The position numbers and the translations under genes were made by a program. Below the pieces are notes generated by a model that was given only the letters and a program-made list of their open reading frames with translations, was not told the origin of the DNA and made no database searches. Shown piece after piece: positions 52,700-57,314 of a stretch of 64,000 bases of DNA. Location of the stretch: the sequence record LR756504.1. One strand, written 5' to 3'. The stretch's first letter is position 1; the number at the start of each line of letters is the position of its first letter.

Positions 52700-52981
52700 A
52701 TGGAAACTATATTGAATTACATAGTCAATAATCGCATAGTCAATGTTGATGGTTGGTATTATTGCCAGAAAAATTGCATTGTTAGTGAACATTCGGTAGA
52801 ACTTTATTTTGAAAATACAAATTCATCACTTGATTATTATATTATGATTAATTTAAGTAAACCATTTAAGTTTTCATTATATAGAGGTGAAAAAATACAG
52901 AAGAAAGCATTTCAAAAAGCTTTTTATAAAAAGTTACCAAGAAATTTAAAAATTCAAAAATTAGTAGGGGGTAGATTATGA
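52700..52981 (+). CDS. Hypothetical protein
   Basis: 93-aa ORF; RNLKIQKL near the C-terminus; ATGA overlap with the next gene. Confidence 0.55.
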   Translation: METILNYIVNNRIVNVDGWYYCQKNCIVSEHSVELYFENTNSSLDYYIMINLSKPFKFSLYRGEKIQKKAFQKAFYKKLPRNLKIQKLVGGRL

Positions 52982-53340
52982 TACAAATTGATTTTATCCG
53001 AGAAAATAAAGATATGATAATCGAAGAATTAAATAAAAAACATTTTCGTAATGCAAAAAAATATGTGGAAATAATTTTAGAAACCGATGCTAAGAGAATG
53101 TCAATTCAAAAAGAATTGGACGAATCTATATTAAGAATTAACATGAAATCAAATGAAATTGAAGTTTATTTAAGTAATGGTGAAATAGAGGCAGCAGAGG
53201 ACATTAAAAATAAATCTAATATATTAGGAAAGAAGATTAAAGAATTAATTAAAGAATTGAAAGATGTTGAAGAAAAACTTAATGATAAATTAGTTAAGCT
53301 TCCTAATATACCGCACACCGATGTTCCTGACATACATTGA
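52978..53340 (+). CDS. Stand-alone seryl-tRNA synthetase N-terminal coiled-coil (tRNA-binding arm)
   Basis: MIQIDFIRENKD...D.KR...Q.ELD...N..S.EI...KL.KLPNIPHTDVP ends exactly at the arm/catalytic-domain hinge. Confidence 0.85.
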   Translation: MIQIDFIRENKDMIIEELNKKHFRNAKKYVEIILETDAKRMSIQKELDESILRINMKSNEIEVYLSNGEIEAAEDIKNKSNILGKKIKELIKELKDVEEKLNDKLVKLPNIPHTDVPDIH

Positions 53341-53452: not shown

Positions 53453-53626
53453 ATGAAATTATTAAAAGTAGAATTATTATCATTATTAATTTACGTAATT
53501 TTAACTCTACCCCATCTTAGTTATTTAATATTTGATGTTGGTATACAATATTCATTACCTGTTTGTTTATCGGTTGGTATAGTTTCAGTTATAATTGGTA
53601 ATATAATAATGTTTGATAGGAAATAA
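53453..53626 (+). CDS. Small two-helix membrane protein (57 aa)
   Basis: Hand-translated MKLLKVELLSLLIYVILTLPHLSYLIFDVGIQYSLPVCLSVGIVSVIIGNIIMFDRK. Confidence 0.5.
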   Translation: MKLLKVELLSLLIYVILTLPHLSYLIFDVGIQYSLPVCLSVGIVSVIIGNIIMFDRK

Positions 53627-53637
53627 TTGATATAAAA

Positions 53638-53669
53638 TTTGGAAGTTTAATTATTTTTGTATATATTTG
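53638..53669 (+). promoter_or_regulatory. Bacteroidota-type housekeeping promoter
   Basis: TTTG-N20-TATATTTG. Confidence 0.75.
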
Positions 53670-53685
53670 TGTTAAAATTAAATTT

Positions 53686-54204
53686 ATGGGATATTCAATT
53701 TCACAAGGTAAAACATCTTTTAAAATTAAAGGTGAAAATATTCAAGGAGCATTAAAAGCTATTAAGGATTTTGCATCGAAGCGAACAAAATTAGGATATT
53801 TTGATGCTAAAAAAATTGCAAATGCTAAAACATTAGACGAAGCGTTTAAAGAACTTTGTTGGAAATTTAAGTACACCGAAGTACAAGAAGATGTTTTAAC
53901 GCTTGATAAAGCAAAAGTTATGTTAGAGTCTCTTTATGGAAAAATAAAAAATGAAGGTGCTAGTGAACAATATGCGTTGTCTTGCTTAGATGAAATTATT
54001 TCTAAATTTCCTAAAGATAAAGATGTTATAGGTATCACACAACAAGTCGAATATTTAGGCGAAGAAAGAATAATCTTTAATGTTATTGCACCATTTGTTG
54101 AAGAAGGTAGCTTTATTGAAATTGTGGGTGAGGATGGTGAAACATGGCGTTGGGTTTTTGAAGGTGGTAAGTGTGAAGAAAAGAAACCAAAAATAAAATG
54201 GTAA
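53686..54204 (+). CDS. Hypothetical protein
   Basis: 172-aa ORF after a host-type promoter. Confidence 0.65.
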   Translation: MGYSISQGKTSFKIKGENIQGALKAIKDFASKRTKLGYFDAKKIANAKTLDEAFKELCWKFKYTEVQEDVLTLDKAKVMLESLYGKIKNEGASEQYALSCLDEIISKFPKDKDVIGITQQVEYLGEERIIFNVIAPFVEEGSFIEIVGEDGETWRWVFEGGKCEEKKPKIKW

Positions 54205-54341
54205 TATTTGTAATTGCGATTCAAGCTGGTAAATGTACAATAGAGAAAAATAAATTCAAAATAAGAAAACAATTTCAAAAAATAAACGTTTACTATAATA
54301 TAACCCATTAAGGGAACAAATAAGTTTAAATATATACTATT

Positions 54342-54431
54342 ATGAAAGCAATGATTTTAAGTTTATGTCTATCGTTATCGCTAAGTTTGCAAAAACTTGG
54401 GGTGGTAGGCGTATGTAAAGTCATTAGTTAA
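54342..54431 (+). CDS. Attenuator leader peptide MKAMILSLCLSLSLSLQKLGVVGVCKVIS
   Basis: Codons 6-16 are TTA AGT TTA TGT CTA TCG TTA TCG CTA AGT TTG, and codon 19 is CTT; all are decoded by the downstream tRNAs. Confidence 0.75.
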   Translation: MKAMILSLCLSLSLSLQKLGVVGVCKVIS

Positions 54432-54490
54432 TATAAAAGACTTTAAATATCTTAAACCCTAAGTTCAAAAGACTTAGGGTTTTTTGTTTT
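54381..54490 (+). promoter_or_regulatory. Transcription attenuator: 1:2 protector, 2:3 antiterminator, 3:4 terminator
   Basis: 1:2 CTAAGTTT-GCAA-AAACTTGG (54381-400); 2:3 AACTTGGGGT (54394-403) with ACCCTAAGTT (54456-65); 3:4 AAACCCTAAGT with ACTTAGGGTTT followed by TTTGTTTT. Confidence 0.75.
54454..54490 (+). terminator. Intrinsic terminator of the attenuator
   Basis: 11-bp stem 54454-64/54472-82 and U-tract to 54490. Confidence 0.88.
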
Positions 54491-54513
54491 ATATTAAAAA
54501 AATTAATGAAATT

Positions 54514-54756
54514 ATGGAAAAGATAATGATTAAAGTTGTGGGTATGTTTAGTAATTGTTATATTCCTAAATATGATATGTATTTTGCTACAAAAACAGAA
54601 CATGGTAATGATGCTATAATTAAAAAAGCAAATGCAATGATAACAGTTTCAAATAATTTTAAAAACATTAATGAAGATTATAAAAGACAATTAGAAAATG
54701 AAGATGAAAAAAATAATGAAACGAAGGCTATATTGGATGGATATAAAGTGATGTAG
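54514..54756 (+). CDS. Hypothetical 80-aa protein, first gene after the attenuator
   Basis: ATG at 54514; the track's TTG start lies inside the terminator U-tract. Confidence 0.55.
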   Translation: MEKIMIKVVGMFSNCYIPKYDMYFATKTEHGNDAIIKKANAMITVSNNFKNINEDYKRQLENEDEKNNETKAILDGYKVM

Positions 54757-54764
54757 TTTTTAAT

Positions 54765-54844
54765 GCTCCCATGGTGGAATGGCAGACACGCTCGGCTTAA
54801 AATCGAGTGCCTTGTGCATACAGGTTCAAGTCCTGTTGGGAGTA
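54765..54844 (+). tRNA. tRNA-Leu(UAA)
   Basis: GCTCCCA/TGGGAGT-A acceptor, CTCGG-CTTAAAA-TCGAG, long variable arm, TTCAAGT T-loop; no encoded CCA. Confidence 0.92.
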
Positions 54845-54857
54845 CTAATTATCACAT

Positions 54858-54943
54858 GCCCTTGTGATGTAATGCAGCCATGAACGCCTTAGAAGCGTTT
54901 GCGAAGTAATAGTAGCGTGTAGGTTCGAGTCCTACCAAGGGTA
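54858..54943 (+). tRNA. tRNA-Leu(UAG)
   Basis: GCCCTTG/CAAGGGT-A, AACGC-CTTAGAA-GCGTT, long variable arm. Confidence 0.92.
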
Positions 54944-54952
54944 CACAATAAT

Positions 54953-55041
54953 GGAGGGAATCTGGCTGGATGAAGAGCCAATCTTGAAAATTGGTAAATC
55001 GGTGATGAACTGGTTTGTGGGTTCGAGTCCCACTTCCTCCT
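54953..55041 (+). tRNA. tRNA-Ser(UGA)
   Basis: GGAGGGA/TTCCTCC-T, CCAAT-CTTGAAA-ATTGG, long variable arm. Confidence 0.9.
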
Positions 55042-55047
55042 CAAAAT

Positions 55048-55120
55048 GGTACTATGGCCGAGTGGATATAGGCGCACGTCTGCAAAACGTGATACATCAG
55101 TTCGAACCTGATTAGTACCT
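55048..55120 (+). tRNA. tRNA-Cys(GCA)
   Basis: GGTACTA/TAGTACC-T (U73), CACGT-CTGCAAA-ACGTG. Confidence 0.93.
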
Positions 55121-55127
55121 CAAAAAT

Positions 55128-55214
55128 GGAGAGTAGGCAAATATTGGTTTGTTGCGGCATCCTGCTAAGATGTTCCGTATAAAAGCGGTGAGGGTTCAAT
55201 TCCCTTGCTCTCCT
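55128..55214 (+). tRNA. tRNA-Ser(GCU)
   Basis: GGAGAGT/GCTCTCC-T, GCATC-CTGCTAA-GATGT, long variable arm, enlarged D region. Confidence 0.88.
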
Positions 55215-55293
55215 CAAATAAAGTTCTATTGTGTAAATATTATCACACTTAAACGTAGCCGAACTTTTTGATATATAATATCAAAAAAAAGCT

Positions 55294-55998
55294 ATGAGTT
55301 TAAAAAGTGAGAAAATATTAAAGTATGCTAAAAAAATTAGAGCGATTGAATTATTAGGTGGTTGTTGCATTGAATGTGGTGTTGATAATATACATAAATT
55401 ATGTTTTCACCATATAAATAGAAATGATAAAAAATTTGATATTTCGGATAAATTAGGATTAAAGTGGAACAAAATAAAAGATGAAGTTATAAAATGTGAG
55501 TTATTATGTTTAAATTGTCATACAGAAAAACATTATAATGAAATTTCTGATAAAAAAGATATAAAAAGAAGGAGTGAAAAAAAACTATTTATTTCAATAA
55601 AGGGTGATTCATGTGAATATTGTAATTATAATAAGTGTGATGCAACATTAGAATTTCATCATCATAATGATAATAAAAATTTCTCTATAGGGAAAAAAAG
55701 ATTAACTAAAAATAATTTATTATTATTTATAGAAGAAATAAACAAGTGTACTTTATTATGTAAAAATTGCCATATTCATTTACATAAAGATAGTTTCTAT
55801 GATGATAATAAAGATGAAATAATAAAAAAGAAAAATGATTATATTGATTTAAATAAAATTGATTTAGATAAATTTTTTGAATTATATAATGGTGGGTATA
55901 AACAAGTTGAAATATCAAAACTGTTAAATTGTTCAAAAAGTAGAATCTCAGAATTAGTTTCAAAATATTTTAAAGGGAAGAATACTCAAGTGATTTAA
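55294..55998 (+). CDS. HNH homing endonuclease with two HNH-like modules and C-terminal HTH
   Basis: CIEC..FHH...CLNCH and CEYC..FHH...CKNCH; QVEISKLLNCSKSRIS; inserted in the tRNA cluster. Confidence 0.85.
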   Translation: MSLKSEKILKYAKKIRAIELLGGCCIECGVDNIHKLCFHHINRNDKKFDISDKLGLKWNKIKDEVIKCELLCLNCHTEKHYNEISDKKDIKRRSEKKLFISIKGDSCEYCNYNKCDATLEFHHHNDNKNFSIGKKRLTKNNLLLFIEEINKCTLLCKNCHIHLHKDSFYDDNKDEIIKKKNDYIDLNKIDLDKFFELYNGGYKQVEISKLLNCSKSRISELVSKYFKGKNTQVI

Positions 55999-56066
55999 GA
56001 GGATACATTGGAAATGTATTAGATCGGGATTAACCTGGTGCGTGAGTTTGAATCTCACTTCTTCCA
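55976..56066 (+). tRNA. tRNA-Ser(GGA)
   Basis: GGAAGAA/TTCTTCC-A, ATACA-TTGGAAA-TGTAT, long variable arm; first 23 nt overlap the end of the HNH ORF. Confidence 0.85.
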
Positions 56067-56071
56067 CAAAT

Positions 56072-56145
56072 GGCTTAGTGATGTAATTGGTAAACGTGTT
56101 CGGTTCAAACCCGAAATTTTATAGGTTCGAGTCCTATCTAAGCTA
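56072..56145 (+). tRNA. tRNA-Leu(CAA) with short variable loop
   Basis: GGCTTAG/CTAAGCT-A, TTCGG-TTCAAAC-CCGAA, 5-nt variable loop ATTTT. Confidence 0.82.
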
Positions 56146-56156
56146 CAATAATAAAT

Positions 56157-56231
56157 GCCATTGTGGTGGAATTGGTTATACACACTAGTCTAAGAAACTA
56201 GGAATTGCAGGTTCGACTCCTGTCAATGGTA
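56157..56231 (+). tRNA. tRNA-Leu(AAG) with A34 and short variable loop
   Basis: GCCATTG/CAATGGT-A, CTAGT-CTAAGAA-ACTAG, 5-nt variable loop GAATT, Leu-like D arm. Confidence 0.85.
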
Positions 56232-56250
56232 CTAAAAAATATATATTTAT

Positions 56251-56934
56251 GTGATAAAAAAACAAAATGTAAAGGTTAAAATAACAGATATAGCAAATAA
56301 TATTCTATTAAATGGTACTTTTAATATAAGAATTAAAAATTATAGAATTGAAATTTTAATTGATTATCCAACATTTAAAAAATTGGAATCTGAGGATAAA
56401 GGATATATGTTATTTAATGATATGGTTATTACAATTAATGATATGAATGTAAAACCAATTATTTATTATTTTCTTTTAGAAGAACCTATATCAGATAATG
56501 ATAATAGAAGAGAATTTTTTAAATTTCTAAACGGTAGTGATAAATATATTGAAGAAGAAATGTATATAGTTCATAGAAGAAAGCGTGATTTTACAACAGA
56601 GCATTTAACTATTGAATTTGATAATATTGAATATTCAATAATTGATTATATAATCTATTGTCAAAAAATTTACGATAAAGCAATTAGACAGAAAATTAAT
56701 ATATTTAAACAAAATTTACCAGAAATAATAGAATTTAATTCTACTAAAGAAGTTCTACAACTAAATATTCGTGAAAAAGATGATGATGATGGATTTGTAT
56801 TTGAATACTTAGATTGTAATAATAAATCAATTATTAATTTTGAATCGTATGATGATATTAATTCTTATGAGATTTCGGAAATATATGGTAACATGCTTAA
56901 TATAAATAAACAAGTTAAAATATTACAATTTTAG
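56251..56934 (+). CDS. Hypothetical protein
   Basis: 227-aa ORF with GTG start. Confidence 0.55.
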   Translation: MIKKQNVKVKITDIANNILLNGTFNIRIKNYRIEILIDYPTFKKLESEDKGYMLFNDMVITINDMNVKPIIYYFLLEEPISDNDNRREFFKFLNGSDKYIEEEMYIVHRRKRDFTTEHLTIEFDNIEYSIIDYIIYCQKIYDKAIRQKINIFKQNLPEIIEFNSTKEVLQLNIREKDDDDGFVFEYLDCNNKSIINFESYDDINSYEISEIYGNMLNINKQVKILQF

Positions 56935-56942
56935 CTTGTTGG

Positions 56943-57314
56943 CTAAATAATTTGCAATTGTATTTTAAGTCCTCTATCATTCAAAGTATTCATGAATGTA
57001 ATTATATATTGTGCTAACATAGAGTCATCAGGATTCATATAAATGGATACTAATTCTTCTGTATTAGAACTATATTCATTATTGGTTATAAAATTTAATA
57101 GTTTATCAAAATCTGAGCGGTATTTTTTACGTCTATCGCTATCATTATACATAAAAGGAGTTCCAATAGGATTACGCAAACCAGGGTATGACATTACTTT
57201 CTTTTTTAAATAGCTAAGAAGTGATATTTTTCTATATGACATAGGAAATTTTGAAAAACCTTCTTCAAATAGATTTAAGTATTGTTCTCTTAGTTTTTCT
57301 ATATCGTTATTCAT
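56943..57314 (-). CDS. Hypothetical protein
   Basis: 123-aa ORF. Confidence 0.55.
   Translation of the reverse strand: MNNDIEKLREQYLNLFEEGFSKFPMSYRKISLLSYLKKKVMSYPGLRNPIGTPFMYNDSDRRKKYRSDFDKLLNFITNNEYSSNTEELVSIYMNPDDSMLAQYIITFMNTLNDRGLKIQLQII

What the first reader, a model, noticed from the sequence alone, without database searches (positions are those of the whole stretch)
54314..56231. Candidate new system: leader-peptide attenuator that switches on a phage tRNA operon by sensing the same tRNAs
Seen: leader 54342-54431 (MKAMILSLCLSLSLSLQKL...) has 11 consecutive codons TTA AGT TTA TGT CTA TCG TTA TCG CTA AGT TTG, plus CTT. The operon downstream contains only Leu(UAA, UAG, CAA, AAG), Ser(UGA, GCU, GGA) and Cys(GCA) tRNAs. 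The four Leu codons used are exactly the cognates of the four Leu tRNAs; CTG and CTC, which have no cognate tRNA here, are absent. Three mutually exclusive helices follow: 1:2 (54381-88/54393-400, GCAA tetraloop), 2:3 antiterminator (54394-403/54456-65, 10 bp) and 3:4 terminator (54454-64/54472-82 plus U-tract). Established: this is the trp/his/leu attenuation logic, which normally controls amino acid biosynthesis or aminoacyl-tRNA synthetase genes. Inference: stalling near codons 9-14, when these tRNAs are uncharged or destroyed by host anticodon nucleases, frees strand 2 and allows read-through, so replacement tRNAs are made on demand. I know of no described attenuator controlling phage tRNA genes. 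Caveats: Ser(GGA) codons are not in the leader, and an overlapping frame (ATG 54365, MSIVIAKFAKTWGGRRM) also exists.
Basis: partly seen in the sequence, partly recalled or inferred. Interest (0 to 1): 0.95.

Follow-up and report, generated by a model that had tools for sequence, protein, structure and literature searches.

The report
Leader-peptide switches controlling phage tRNA genes
A giant phage places a tiny test gene, built from the codons read by the tRNA genes behind it, plus a stop signal in front of each tRNA cluster. This looks like a self-adjusting tRNA supply switch, it recurs in many phages including cultured ones, and I found no prior description.

Summary
Window 54342-54431 encodes a 29-aa leader (MKAMILSLCLSLSLSLQKL...). 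It is followed by a strong intrinsic terminator and then by all eight Leu/Ser/Cys tRNA genes of this phage.

The window is part of LR756504.1, a 636-kb uncultured huge phage predicted to infect Bacteroidetes. The element is not a one-off.
- The same genome has at least eight promoter-leader-terminator units. Each sits in front of tRNAs whose amino acids match its codon run, for example IAIVEIAVIGGAEEGV before Glu/Ala/Ile/Val/Gly and FWHFHF before His/Phe.
- The logic is nested within arrays: KQDKQYQPQYD, then KKQQYKQYQPQYK, then KKKK.
- The design recurs in two other huge phages, about 20 unrelated IMG/VR contigs and the cultured Cellulophaga phages phi4:1 and phi38:1. It was absent from 120 bacterial loci with the same terminator motif.
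- Leader-to-tRNA matching beat all 20,000 shuffles.

Folding shows three mutually exclusive helices. The terminator is lost only when a ribosome is modelled stalled on the run.

Verdict: a ribosome-mediated attenuator giving feedback control of phage tRNA supply. It is a new variant of a known mechanism, and ten literature searches found no description.

The parts
54265..54299 (+). Promoter-like motif GAAAACAATTT-N4-AAATAAACGTT-N3-TATAAT. It is a diverged copy of the motif GAAAACATTTnnnnnATATATACGTTATAATA found upstream of the other tRNA leaders.
   Evidence: Alignment of the eight units. The exact 11-mer ATATATACGTT occurs only four times in 636 kb, each time upstream of a tRNA leader. Coordinates. 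Function as a promoter is inferred.
54342..54431 (+). Leader ORF, 29 codons plus stop: MKAMILSLCLSLSLSLQKLGVVGVCKVIS.
   Evidence: It has the same build (start codon followed by an A-rich second codon, cognate run, region 2, stop before the terminator) as the seven paralogs.
54357..54389 (+). Sensor run: 11 consecutive Leu/Ser/Cys codons (TTA AGT TTA TGT CTA TCG TTA TCG CTA AGT TTG). This is strand 1.
   Evidence: Longest L/S/C run in the window. All 11 codons are decodable by the downstream tRNAs by Watson-Crick or standard wobble pairing.
54348..54425 (+). Helix 1:2, a long imperfect hairpin with many G-U pairs that encloses the run. It sequesters strand 2 when the leader is not translated or after the ribosome has passed.
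   Evidence: -30.2 kcal/mol, z = -6.5, and 0 of 200 shuffles fold as well.
54394..54465 (+). Antiterminator (2:3). 54394-54403 AACUUGGGGU pairs with 54456-54465 ACCCUAAGUU, and inner helices join 54406-54422 to 54439-54454.
   Evidence: -23.5 kcal/mol, z = -5.5. It remains the minimum-energy structure even when the terminator 3' arm is present, provided strand 1 is absent.
54454..54494 (+). Intrinsic terminator (3:4): a 12-bp stem at 54454-54465 / 54471-54482 with a 5-nt loop, then the tail TTTTTTGTTTTATAT.
   Evidence: -15 kcal/mol, z = -4.3. The 18-mer GGGTTTTTTGTTTTATAT is identical in paralogs A1 and B and abuts tRNA arrays in many other phages.
54514..54756 (+). 80-aa ORF of unknown function between the terminator and the first tRNA. 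The paralogs lack it.
   Evidence: No Pfam family. No sigma-70-like site and no TAnnTTTG site lies between the terminator and the tRNAs.
54765..55215 (+). First tRNA block: Leu-UAA 54765-54845, Leu-UAG 54858-54944, Ser-UGA 54951-55040, Cys-GCA 55048-55121, Ser-GCU 55128-55215.
55294..55998 (+). 234-aa ORF with two CxxC...HH...CxNCH (HNH-like) modules, inserted in the array. Its end overlaps the start of tRNA-Ser-GGA.
   Evidence: about 70% identical DNA in LR756501/LR756503. No Pfam hit at E <= 0.01. The HNH reading comes from motifs seen in the translation.
55976..56232 (+). Second tRNA block: Ser-GGA 55976-56067, Leu-CAA 56072-56146 (75 nt), Leu-AAG 56157-56232 (76 nt).

Best explanation
This is a ribosome-mediated (leader-peptide) transcription attenuator that gates a phage tRNA operon. 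It is one of at least eight such units in this genome.

Proposed mechanism:
1. Transcription starts at a dedicated promoter and the 29-codon leader is translated at once.
2. If charged Leu, Ser and Cys tRNAs are plentiful, the ribosome runs through the 11-codon run and onto strand 2 (54394-54403 onward).
3. Strand 3 is then free to pair with strand 4, the terminator forms, and RNA polymerase stops before the tRNA genes.
4. If any of these charged tRNAs is scarce, the ribosome stalls inside the run. Strand 1 is held in the ribosome and strand 2 is left free.
5. Strand 2 pairs with strand 3 (the antiterminator), the terminator cannot form, and polymerase reads into the tRNA genes. The tRNAs are then cut out of the read-through transcript.
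6. Without any translation, the 1:2 hairpin forms and termination again prevails.

The products of the operon, once charged by the host synthetases, relieve the stall. This makes a negative-feedback controller of the supply of exactly those tRNAs.

Inside long arrays, further attenuators sense only the tRNAs still downstream, so sub-blocks are tuned separately.

Shown here by computation: the ORF, the run, the tRNAs, the three alternative helices, the paralogs, the cross-phage recurrence and the statistics.

Inferred: that the leader is translated, that ribosomes stall, that transcription and translation are coupled, that read-through changes, and what triggers scarcity during infection.
For: 1. 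Anatomy confirmed.

2. Replication within the genome. Eight units each sit directly in front of matching tRNAs.
- F1: KQDKQYQPQYD before Asp, Tyr, Tyr, Gln, Lys.
- F2: KKQQYKQYQPQYK before Tyr, Tyr, Gln, Lys (no Asp codon and no Asp tRNA).
- F3: KKKK (AAG AAA AAG AAA) before Lys-CUU and Lys-UUU.
- A1: TTIIRNMNNNINRTRTT before Thr, Asn, Thr, Arg, Arg, Ile, Met.
- A2: IAMIIRMRIIR before Arg, Ile, Met.
- B: IAIVEIAVIGGAEEGV, the single longest such run in 636 kb, before Glu, Ala, Ile, Val, Gly, Glu.
- D: FWHFHF before His, Phe.
- H: the element in the window.

3. Recurrence elsewhere. About 33 of 120 IMG/VR loci carrying the terminator 18-mer have the leader-plus-tRNA build.
- Examples include QQQQQQ before Gln, Gln and YYYEE before Glu, Glu, Tyr, Glu, Tyr.
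- Huge phage LR756501 has SKHSKHFSSSSKWF before Trp, His, His, Phe, Lys, Ser.
- Huge phage LR745206 has HKNFSKSHKWFS before His, Phe, Trp, Lys, and SKSSSRSSS before Arg, Ser.
- Cultured Cellulophaga phage phi4:1 has QRLHLQELEQP before Pro, Glu, Gln, His, Leu, Leu, Arg.
- phi4:1 also has TKTGITVIDKTKGARAY before Ala, Lys, Ile, Gly, Met, Asp, Thr, Val, Arg, Met, Tyr.
- Cultured Cellulophaga phage phi38:1 has IATDIRTKGVK before Lys, Ile, Gly, Asp, Thr, Val, Arg.

4. Statistics.
- For 18 non-redundant leaders, the best 10-residue window holds 6.67 cognate residues against 3.05 +/- 0.42 when pairings are shuffled. None of 20,000 shuffles reached the observed value.
- 79 of 89 run codons are decodable by downstream tRNAs.
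- Rare codons are enriched in the runs: 25 of 85 against 10.9 expected, P about 3e-5.

5. Structure.
- With a ribosome footprint imposed, P(terminator) for H is 0.93 without a ribosome or at the stop codon. It falls to 0.08-0.3 with the A site on codons 8-12.
- Similar switches appear in F1, A1, B, phi38:1 gp066 and L106.
- In nearly all 21 modelled elements the terminator 5' arm is sequestered until the ribosome passes the end of the run.
- Each leader pairs best with its own terminator arm: -17.0 against -10.2 kcal/mol, with 5 of 20,000 permutations as good.

6. In seven of the eight units of this genome the tRNA starts 1-4 nt after the terminator tail.

7. None of 120 bacterial loci with the same 18-mer shows the build.
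Against: - No experiment of any kind exists. Translation of the leader, stalling and read-through are all inferred.
- No ortholog of the window's own element was found outside this phage. Its conservation rests on paralogs and analogs.
- Ser-GGA codons (TCT, TCC) are absent from the leader although that tRNA is in the operon.
- 10 of 89 run codons have no decoding tRNA downstream under standard wobble rules. One example is CCG in F1 and F2, although ARAGORN finds no tRNA-Pro in this genome.
- In several elements (D, A2, and many from other phages) equilibrium folding keeps the terminator whatever the ribosome position. A kinetic, co-transcriptional choice has to be assumed there.
- The leaders have no Shine-Dalgarno sequence. 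That is usual for Bacteroidota (my own knowledge), but tight transcription-translation coupling in such hosts has not been demonstrated.
- In the window, 282 nt carrying an ORF separate the terminator from the first tRNA. The scans would miss a promoter of an unknown type there.
Confidence: 0.85

Rival explanations
1. The same leader and translation sensing, but a different output. Ribosome position on the leader would control processing or stability of the precursor, or Rho access, rather than intrinsic termination. For example, it could alter RNase P or RNase E access to the first tRNA, which abuts the hairpin.
For: The tRNA 5' end lies 1-4 nt from the terminator tail in most units. In many elements the terminator stays thermodynamically dominant at every ribosome position.
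Against: Every unit has a canonical hairpin plus U-tract. Every unit also has a leader segment complementary to its own terminator 5' arm, which is needed only if formation of the terminator hairpin itself is the regulated step.
Confidence: 0.06
2. A translation-independent RNA sensor. The codon run would act as a row of specifier triplets that bind the anticodons of (uncharged) tRNAs directly, in the manner of a T-box, and so stabilise the antiterminator.
For: The run is a string of triplets complementary to the downstream anticodons. T-box elements do sense tRNA (my own knowledge).
Against: No T-box or other Rfam family matches at E <= 1. In about 30 independent elements the run is in frame with a start codon (ATG in all but one, where GTG is likely) and the ORF closes before the terminator. 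An RNA-only sensor would not need that. The run lies inside helix 1:2, not in a specifier-loop setting.
Confidence: 0.04
3. The short ORFs encode peptides that act in trans, such as small membrane or regulatory peptides. The terminator would merely end their transcript, and the tRNAs would be made by constitutive leak-through.
For: The window's peptide is hydrophobic (LSLCLSLSLSL). Two Cellulophaga leaders are annotated as hypothetical proteins.
Against: Peptide sequence and chemistry are not conserved. Paralogs are highly polar, for example KQDKQYQPQYD and KKKK. The only conserved property is identity with the downstream tRNA set, which no shuffle reproduces.
Confidence: 0.02
4. Chance or a composition artefact: a repeat-like AT-rich spacer that happens to translate into Leu/Ser/Cys.
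For: TTA, AGT and TGT are common codons in a 27% G+C genome. The Leu codon match alone has P of about 0.13.
Against: Only three L/S/C runs of 11 or more exist in 636 kb across six frames. One of them sits 408 nt upstream of the only Leu/Ser/Cys tRNA cluster. Seven other units, and about 25 leader families elsewhere, show the same match with other amino acids.
Confidence: 0.01

Closest known systems
Classical leader-peptide attenuators of amino-acid biosynthesis operons (trp, his, leu, pheA, thr, ilvGMEDA of enterobacteria). Comparison from my own knowledge.
   Same: A short translated leader with a run of regulatory codons. Strands 1-4 with mutually exclusive 1:2, 2:3 and 3:4 helices. An intrinsic terminator before the regulated genes. 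Termination in the absence of translation. Use of rare codons in the run, as with CUA in the leu leader. Leaders that sense several amino acids also exist (thr: Thr + Ile; ilv: Leu + Val + Ile).
   Different: The regulated genes here are tRNA genes, not enzymes, so the sensed molecule is itself the product and the feedback is direct. Runs combine up to about ten different amino acids and mirror the gene content of the array. Attenuators are nested inside arrays. The device is carried by phages. There is no sequence similarity to the Rfam leader families.
pheM leader attenuator of pheST (phenylalanyl-tRNA synthetase) in E. coli. Comparison from my own knowledge.
   Same: Leader-peptide attenuation applied to a gene of the translation apparatus, sensing charged tRNA of the same specificity.
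   Different: It controls a synthetase, senses one amino acid, and is cellular. Here the tRNAs themselves are controlled.
T-box riboswitches (Rfam RF00230).
   Same: Transcription antitermination in response to the supply or charging state of a specific tRNA.
   Different: A T-box binds uncharged tRNA directly, without translation, through a specifier codon and the T-box sequence, and it controls synthetase or amino-acid genes. No T-box match was found here, and a translated ORF is the conserved feature.
Phage tRNA gene arrays as described so far, for example in huge phages (PMC7162821) and the opinion paper PMC11025619.
   Same: Clusters of tRNA genes, often broken up by homing-endonuclease-like ORFs, thought to match phage codon usage or replace lost host tRNAs.
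   Different: Neither paper mentions attenuation or a leader. Expression has been treated as promoter-driven.

Membership tests
Ribosome-mediated (leader-peptide) transcription attenuator | Short ORF with its own start and stop codon between the promoter and the regulated genes | tested here: met
   ORF at 54342-54431. The same holds in seven paralogs and in other phages.
Ribosome-mediated (leader-peptide) transcription attenuator | Run of regulatory codons that matches the specificity of the regulated products | tested here: met
   At the amino-acid level, 11 of 11 codons are Leu/Ser/Cys in front of Leu/Ser/Cys tRNAs. The permutation test gave 0 of 20,000. At the codon level, 79 of 89 run codons are decodable by downstream tRNAs, but the Leu codon choice in the window is not itself significant.
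Ribosome-mediated (leader-peptide) transcription attenuator | Intrinsic terminator (G+C-rich hairpin plus U-tract) between the leader and the regulated genes | tested here: met
   A 12-bp stem at 54454-54482 plus TTTTTTGTTTT. Present in all eight units.
Ribosome-mediated (leader-peptide) transcription attenuator | Antiterminator helix that uses the terminator 5' arm and a leader segment just 3' of the run, and excludes the terminator | tested here: met
   54394-54403 pairs with 54456-54465 plus inner helices, -23.5 kcal/mol, z = -5.5. Own-versus-other pairing is -17.0 against -10.2 kcal/mol, 5 of 20,000 permutations.
Ribosome-mediated (leader-peptide) transcription attenuator | Geometry: a ribosome stalled in the run frees strand 2, and a ribosome past the run covers it | tested here: met
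   Footprint-constrained folding. This is in silico only.
Ribosome-mediated (leader-peptide) transcription attenuator | Read-through rises when the cognate aminoacyl-tRNA is limiting and needs translation of the leader | not testable with these tools
   Needs reporters, 3'-end mapping or coupled in vitro transcription-translation.
Ribosome-mediated (leader-peptide) transcription attenuator | Regulated genes encode amino-acid biosynthesis enzymes or synthetases (the usual targets) | tested here: not met
   The targets are tRNA genes. This is the point of novelty, not a mechanistic requirement.
Curated Rfam leader families (Leu, His, Thr, Trp leaders and others) | Match to the family covariance model | tested here: not met
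   Only tRNA matches at E <= 1 in 53500-57000. In the paralog D region nothing beyond tRNA reached a family's gathering score.
T-box riboswitch | Match to RF00230, with specifier loop and conserved T-box sequence | tested here: not met
   No match at E <= 1.
Type I toxin or other small hydrophobic peptide gene | Conserved hydrophobic, membrane-spanning peptide | tested here: not met
   Paralogous leaders are polar (KQDKQYQPQYD, KKKK) and share only their N-terminal few residues.

The most novel reading that the evidence does not exclude
These leaders may be codon-resolved alarm sensors in the phage-host conflict over tRNA. When host anticodon nucleases, or the phage's own shut-off of the host, remove particular tRNAs, the matching sub-operon alone would be de-repressed and would replace them on demand. 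The nested attenuators would set an order of priority within an array. If so, the amino-acid content of a phage's leaders would report which tRNAs are contested in its host. The elements would also be ready-made, modular biosensors of the supply of any chosen set of tRNAs.
Probability: 0.3. Interest if true: 0.95.

Novelty: new variant of a known kind. Interest (0 to 1): 0.9.

Why it matters
Why phages carry tRNA genes is an old open question. The main proposals are codon-usage matching, replacement of degraded host tRNAs, and escape from tRNA-targeting defence.

A built-in sensor that switches each tRNA block on only when translation of exactly those codons falters says that the phage treats tRNA supply as a regulated quantity. 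It also gives a direct experimental handle, namely the leaders.

It extends leader-peptide attenuation from metabolic operons to genes for stable RNAs. The leaders are composite, sensing up to about ten amino acids, and the sensors are nested within arrays.

The device is present in cultured Cellulophaga phages, where the leaders are currently annotated as hypothetical proteins or not annotated at all. It can therefore be tested now. Genome annotation pipelines could also flag it.

Tried and rejected
- Orthologs of the window's own element. blastn against 50,697 phage records found only the same genome plus tRNA or HNH fragments. The flanking 172-aa protein found only copies of the same phage in IMG/VR and in metagenomes, plus one unrelated high-G+C contig.
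- The promoter motif scan found only the same phage and one unrelated sequence that appears on two contigs.
- The leader peptide is too short for the protein homology search. tblastn with a 35-aa leader from the commonest IMG/VR family found nothing in the phage collection. One blastn used wrong coordinates.
- Rfam found no family other than tRNA. The 73-nt spacer before tRNA-His in unit D has a CUCCAAA loop and a T arm, but neither ARAGORN nor Rfam calls it a tRNA. A Trp tRNA to match the W codon is therefore unproven.
- The codon-level argument for Leu is rejected as evidence.
- The overlapping frame (ATG 54365, MSIVIAKFAKTWGGRRM) is rejected because no paralog has a counterpart and it carries no cognate run.
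- tRNA clusters C, E and G and the first genes of clusters A and F (Met and odd tRNAs) have no such leader.
- The Bacteroidota -7 motif TAnnTTTG is not enriched in the window and is uninformative here.
- Ten literature searches, and reading of the genome's source paper, a phage-tRNA opinion paper and the phi38:1 transcriptome paper, found no description of the device.


Full report
**Source of the window.** The window is bases 534061-598060 of LR756504.1, an unannotated 636,363-bp uncultured phage genome. It is one of the four largest genomes of Al-Shayeb et al. 2020. That paper predicts Bacteroidetes hosts for phages of this size and mentions neither attenuation nor leaders (PMC7162821). The window has 27% G+C.

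**Observation.** The 29-codon ORF at 54342-54431 reads MKAMILSLCLSLSLSLQKLGVVGVCKVIS. Codons 6-16 (54357-54389) are all Leu, Ser or Cys.
- This is the longest such run in six frames of the window and one of three runs of 11 or more in the whole genome.
- A 12-bp hairpin at 54454-54482 followed by TTTTTTGTTTT is the stronger of only two terminator-like sites the scan found in 4.5 kb; the other lies inside a tRNA gene.
- Downstream lie exactly eight tRNA genes: Leu-UAA, Leu-UAG, Ser-UGA, Cys-GCA, Ser-GCU, then an HNH-like ORF, then Ser-GGA, Leu-CAA and Leu-AAG.
- ARAGORN on the whole genome finds 38 tRNAs in several clusters. All Leu, Ser and Cys genes are in this one.

**Structures in the window.**
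- The leader alone folds into a long imperfect hairpin at 54348-54425 (-30.2 kcal/mol, z = -6.5).
- With the 5' half removed, as when a ribosome sits on the run, 54390-54470 folds into an extended antiterminator (-23.5 kcal/mol, z = -5.5). In it, 54394-54403 pairs with 54456-54465.
- This remains the minimum-energy fold even when the terminator 3' arm is added.
- The terminator alone is -15 kcal/mol, z = -4.3.
- With a 27-nt ribosome footprint forced single-stranded, the terminator probability is 0.93 without a ribosome and at the stop codon. It is 0.08-0.3 when the A site is on codons 8-12.

**Replication within the genome.** I looked upstream of every other tRNA cluster of the genome for runs of the cognate amino acids.
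- This found a 16-residue run, IAIVEIAVIGGAEEGV, the longest of its kind in 636 kb. It lies 153 nt before the Glu/Ala/Ile/Val/Gly/Glu cluster.
- A search for the terminator tail then gave eight units of one build: promoter-like motif, leader starting ATG A(A/G/C)A, cognate run, CUUGG(G/A)-like strand 2, stop, hairpin, T-tract. In seven of the eight the tRNA follows 1-4 nt later.
- The runs are listed in the For line.
- The logic is nested. In one array, F1 senses K, Q, D and Y ahead of Asp, Tyr, Tyr, Gln and Lys. F2, placed after the Asp gene, senses K, Q and Y. F3 senses only K ahead of the Lys genes. A1 and A2 behave the same way.
- The exact 11-mer ATATATACGTT occurs four times in the genome, each time upstream of such a leader.

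**Recurrence in other phages.** The terminator tail GGGTTTTTTGTTTTATAT was scanned in IMG/VR.
- Of 120 loci returned, about 33 had the tail abutting a tRNA array. Nearly all of those had a short upstream ORF that mirrors the array.
- A second pass found internal attenuators with the same nested logic.
- Two other huge phage genomes carry them, and their leaders track their own arrays.
- LR756501 has SKHSKHFSSSSKWF before Trp, His, His, Phe, Lys, Ser. This genome's D unit has only FWHFHF before His, Phe.
- The cultured Cellulophaga baltica phages phi4:1 and phi38:1 carry them too, unannotated or annotated as hypothetical proteins with miscalled starts.
- The same 18-mer in 120 bacterial loci, mostly Bacteroidota, never showed the build.

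**Statistics.**
- For 18 non-redundant leaders in front of arrays with at most six amino-acid types, the best 10-residue window held on average 6.67 cognate residues. Shuffled pairings gave 3.05 +/- 0.42, and none of 20,000 reached the observed value.
- Each leader pairs better with its own terminator 5' arm than with those of its paralogs: -17.0 against -10.2 kcal/mol, with 5 of 20,000 permutations as good.
- 79 of 89 run codons can be read by a downstream tRNA.
- Codons with relative usage of 0.15 or less are enriched in the runs: 25 of 85 against 10.9 expected, P about 3e-5.
- When the RNA is truncated before the terminator 3' arm, the 5' arm is sequestered (about 0.6-0.95) while the ribosome is at or before the run. 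It is freed (0.01-0.3) once the ribosome moves past the run. This holds in nearly all 21 elements modelled.

- The match of four Leu codons to four Leu anticodons is expected, because those codons make up 97% of Leu usage (P about 0.13).
- CTT is part of the CUUGG(G/A) strand-2 motif that units A1, A2 and D also have.
- The overlapping frame has no counterpart in paralogs.
- No promoter-like site lies between the terminator and the first tRNA block. In the paralogs there is no room for one.
- The link to anticodon nucleases is untested.

**Mechanism and its status.** The best-supported reading is classical ribosome-mediated attenuation applied to tRNA genes, which gives feedback control of tRNA supply. 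Everything structural and comparative above is computed. Translation, stalling, coupling and read-through are inferred.

**Weak points.**
- There is no ortholog of this particular unit.
- Ser-GGA codons are missing from the leader.
- CCG appears in two leaders although ARAGORN finds no tRNA-Pro in the genome.
- Several elements have terminators that dominate at equilibrium, so a kinetic choice must be assumed.
- There is no Shine-Dalgarno sequence.

**Novelty.** Ten full-text searches and three papers read found no description of leader-peptide attenuators in front of tRNA genes. Subscription-only literature is not covered. I rate it a new variant of a known mechanism, of high interest because it bears directly on why phages carry tRNAs and can be tested in cultured phages.

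Noticed in passing
window 52978-53340 (+): A 120-aa ORF that is only the N-terminal tRNA-binding arm of seryl-tRNA synthetase (Pfam PF02403, E = 4.7e-16), with no catalytic domain. It lies about 1 kb upstream of the Ser/Leu tRNA cluster.
   Followed up: partly
window 56072-56146 and 56157-56232 (+): The tRNAs with Leu anticodons CAA and AAG are 75 and 76 nt long and have a short variable region. Bacterial tRNA-Leu normally has a long extra arm. Cellulophaga phage phi4:1 also has a 75-nt 'tRNA-Leu'. It is unclear which synthetase charges them.
   Followed up: no
window 55294-55998 (+): An ORF with two HNH-like CxxC...HH...CxNCH modules and a helix-turn-helix-like tail sits inside the tRNA array, and its end overlaps the start of tRNA-Ser-GGA. 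About 70% identical DNA occurs in LR756501 and LR756503. It is probably a homing endonuclease.
   Followed up: partly
window 54514-54756 (+): An 80-aa ORF with no Pfam family is wedged between the attenuator terminator and the first tRNA. The seven paralogous units have no such insert.
   Followed up: partly
LR756504.1 136122-136197, 281045-281120, 402360-402435, 461088-461164 (- strand; loci L003, L006, L009, L010), plus unrecognised copies just upstream of clusters A, F and G: A family of tRNA-like genes (ggcccgttcgtctagaggcttaggacg...) with 6- or 8-nt anticodon loops, for which ARAGORN reports 2- or 4-base anticodons. Those upstream of clusters F and G follow a conserved stretch of about 75 nt containing a Bacteroidota-type TAACTTTG motif. 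None has a leader attenuator.
   Followed up: partly
LR756504.1 309819-309891 (locus L007 9819-9891): The 73-nt spacer between the D-unit terminator and tRNA-His has a T arm and an AUGAU-CUCCAAA-AUCAU arm (anticodon CCA, Trp) but no normal D arm. Neither ARAGORN nor Rfam recognises it. The D leader contains one Trp codon.
   Followed up: partly
LR756504.1 units F1 and F2 (- strand, near 401900 and 401650): Both leaders contain the rare Pro codon CCG (QPQY), although ARAGORN finds no tRNA-Pro gene anywhere in the genome. More generally, rare G+C-rich codons (TCG, CAG, CGC, ACG, GCC, GGG, GGC) are over-used in the runs.
   Followed up: partly
L263 3868-3987 (phi4:1 gp075), L263 2944-3012 (unannotated), L264 1808-1915 (phi38:1 gp066): In the cultured Cellulophaga phages the leaders are either unannotated or annotated as hypothetical proteins that start at an upstream TTG lying inside the promoter TTGTATGTTTGCCAA (phi4:1) or upstream of the leader's ATG (phi38:1). 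The real starts are probably further downstream.
   Followed up: partly
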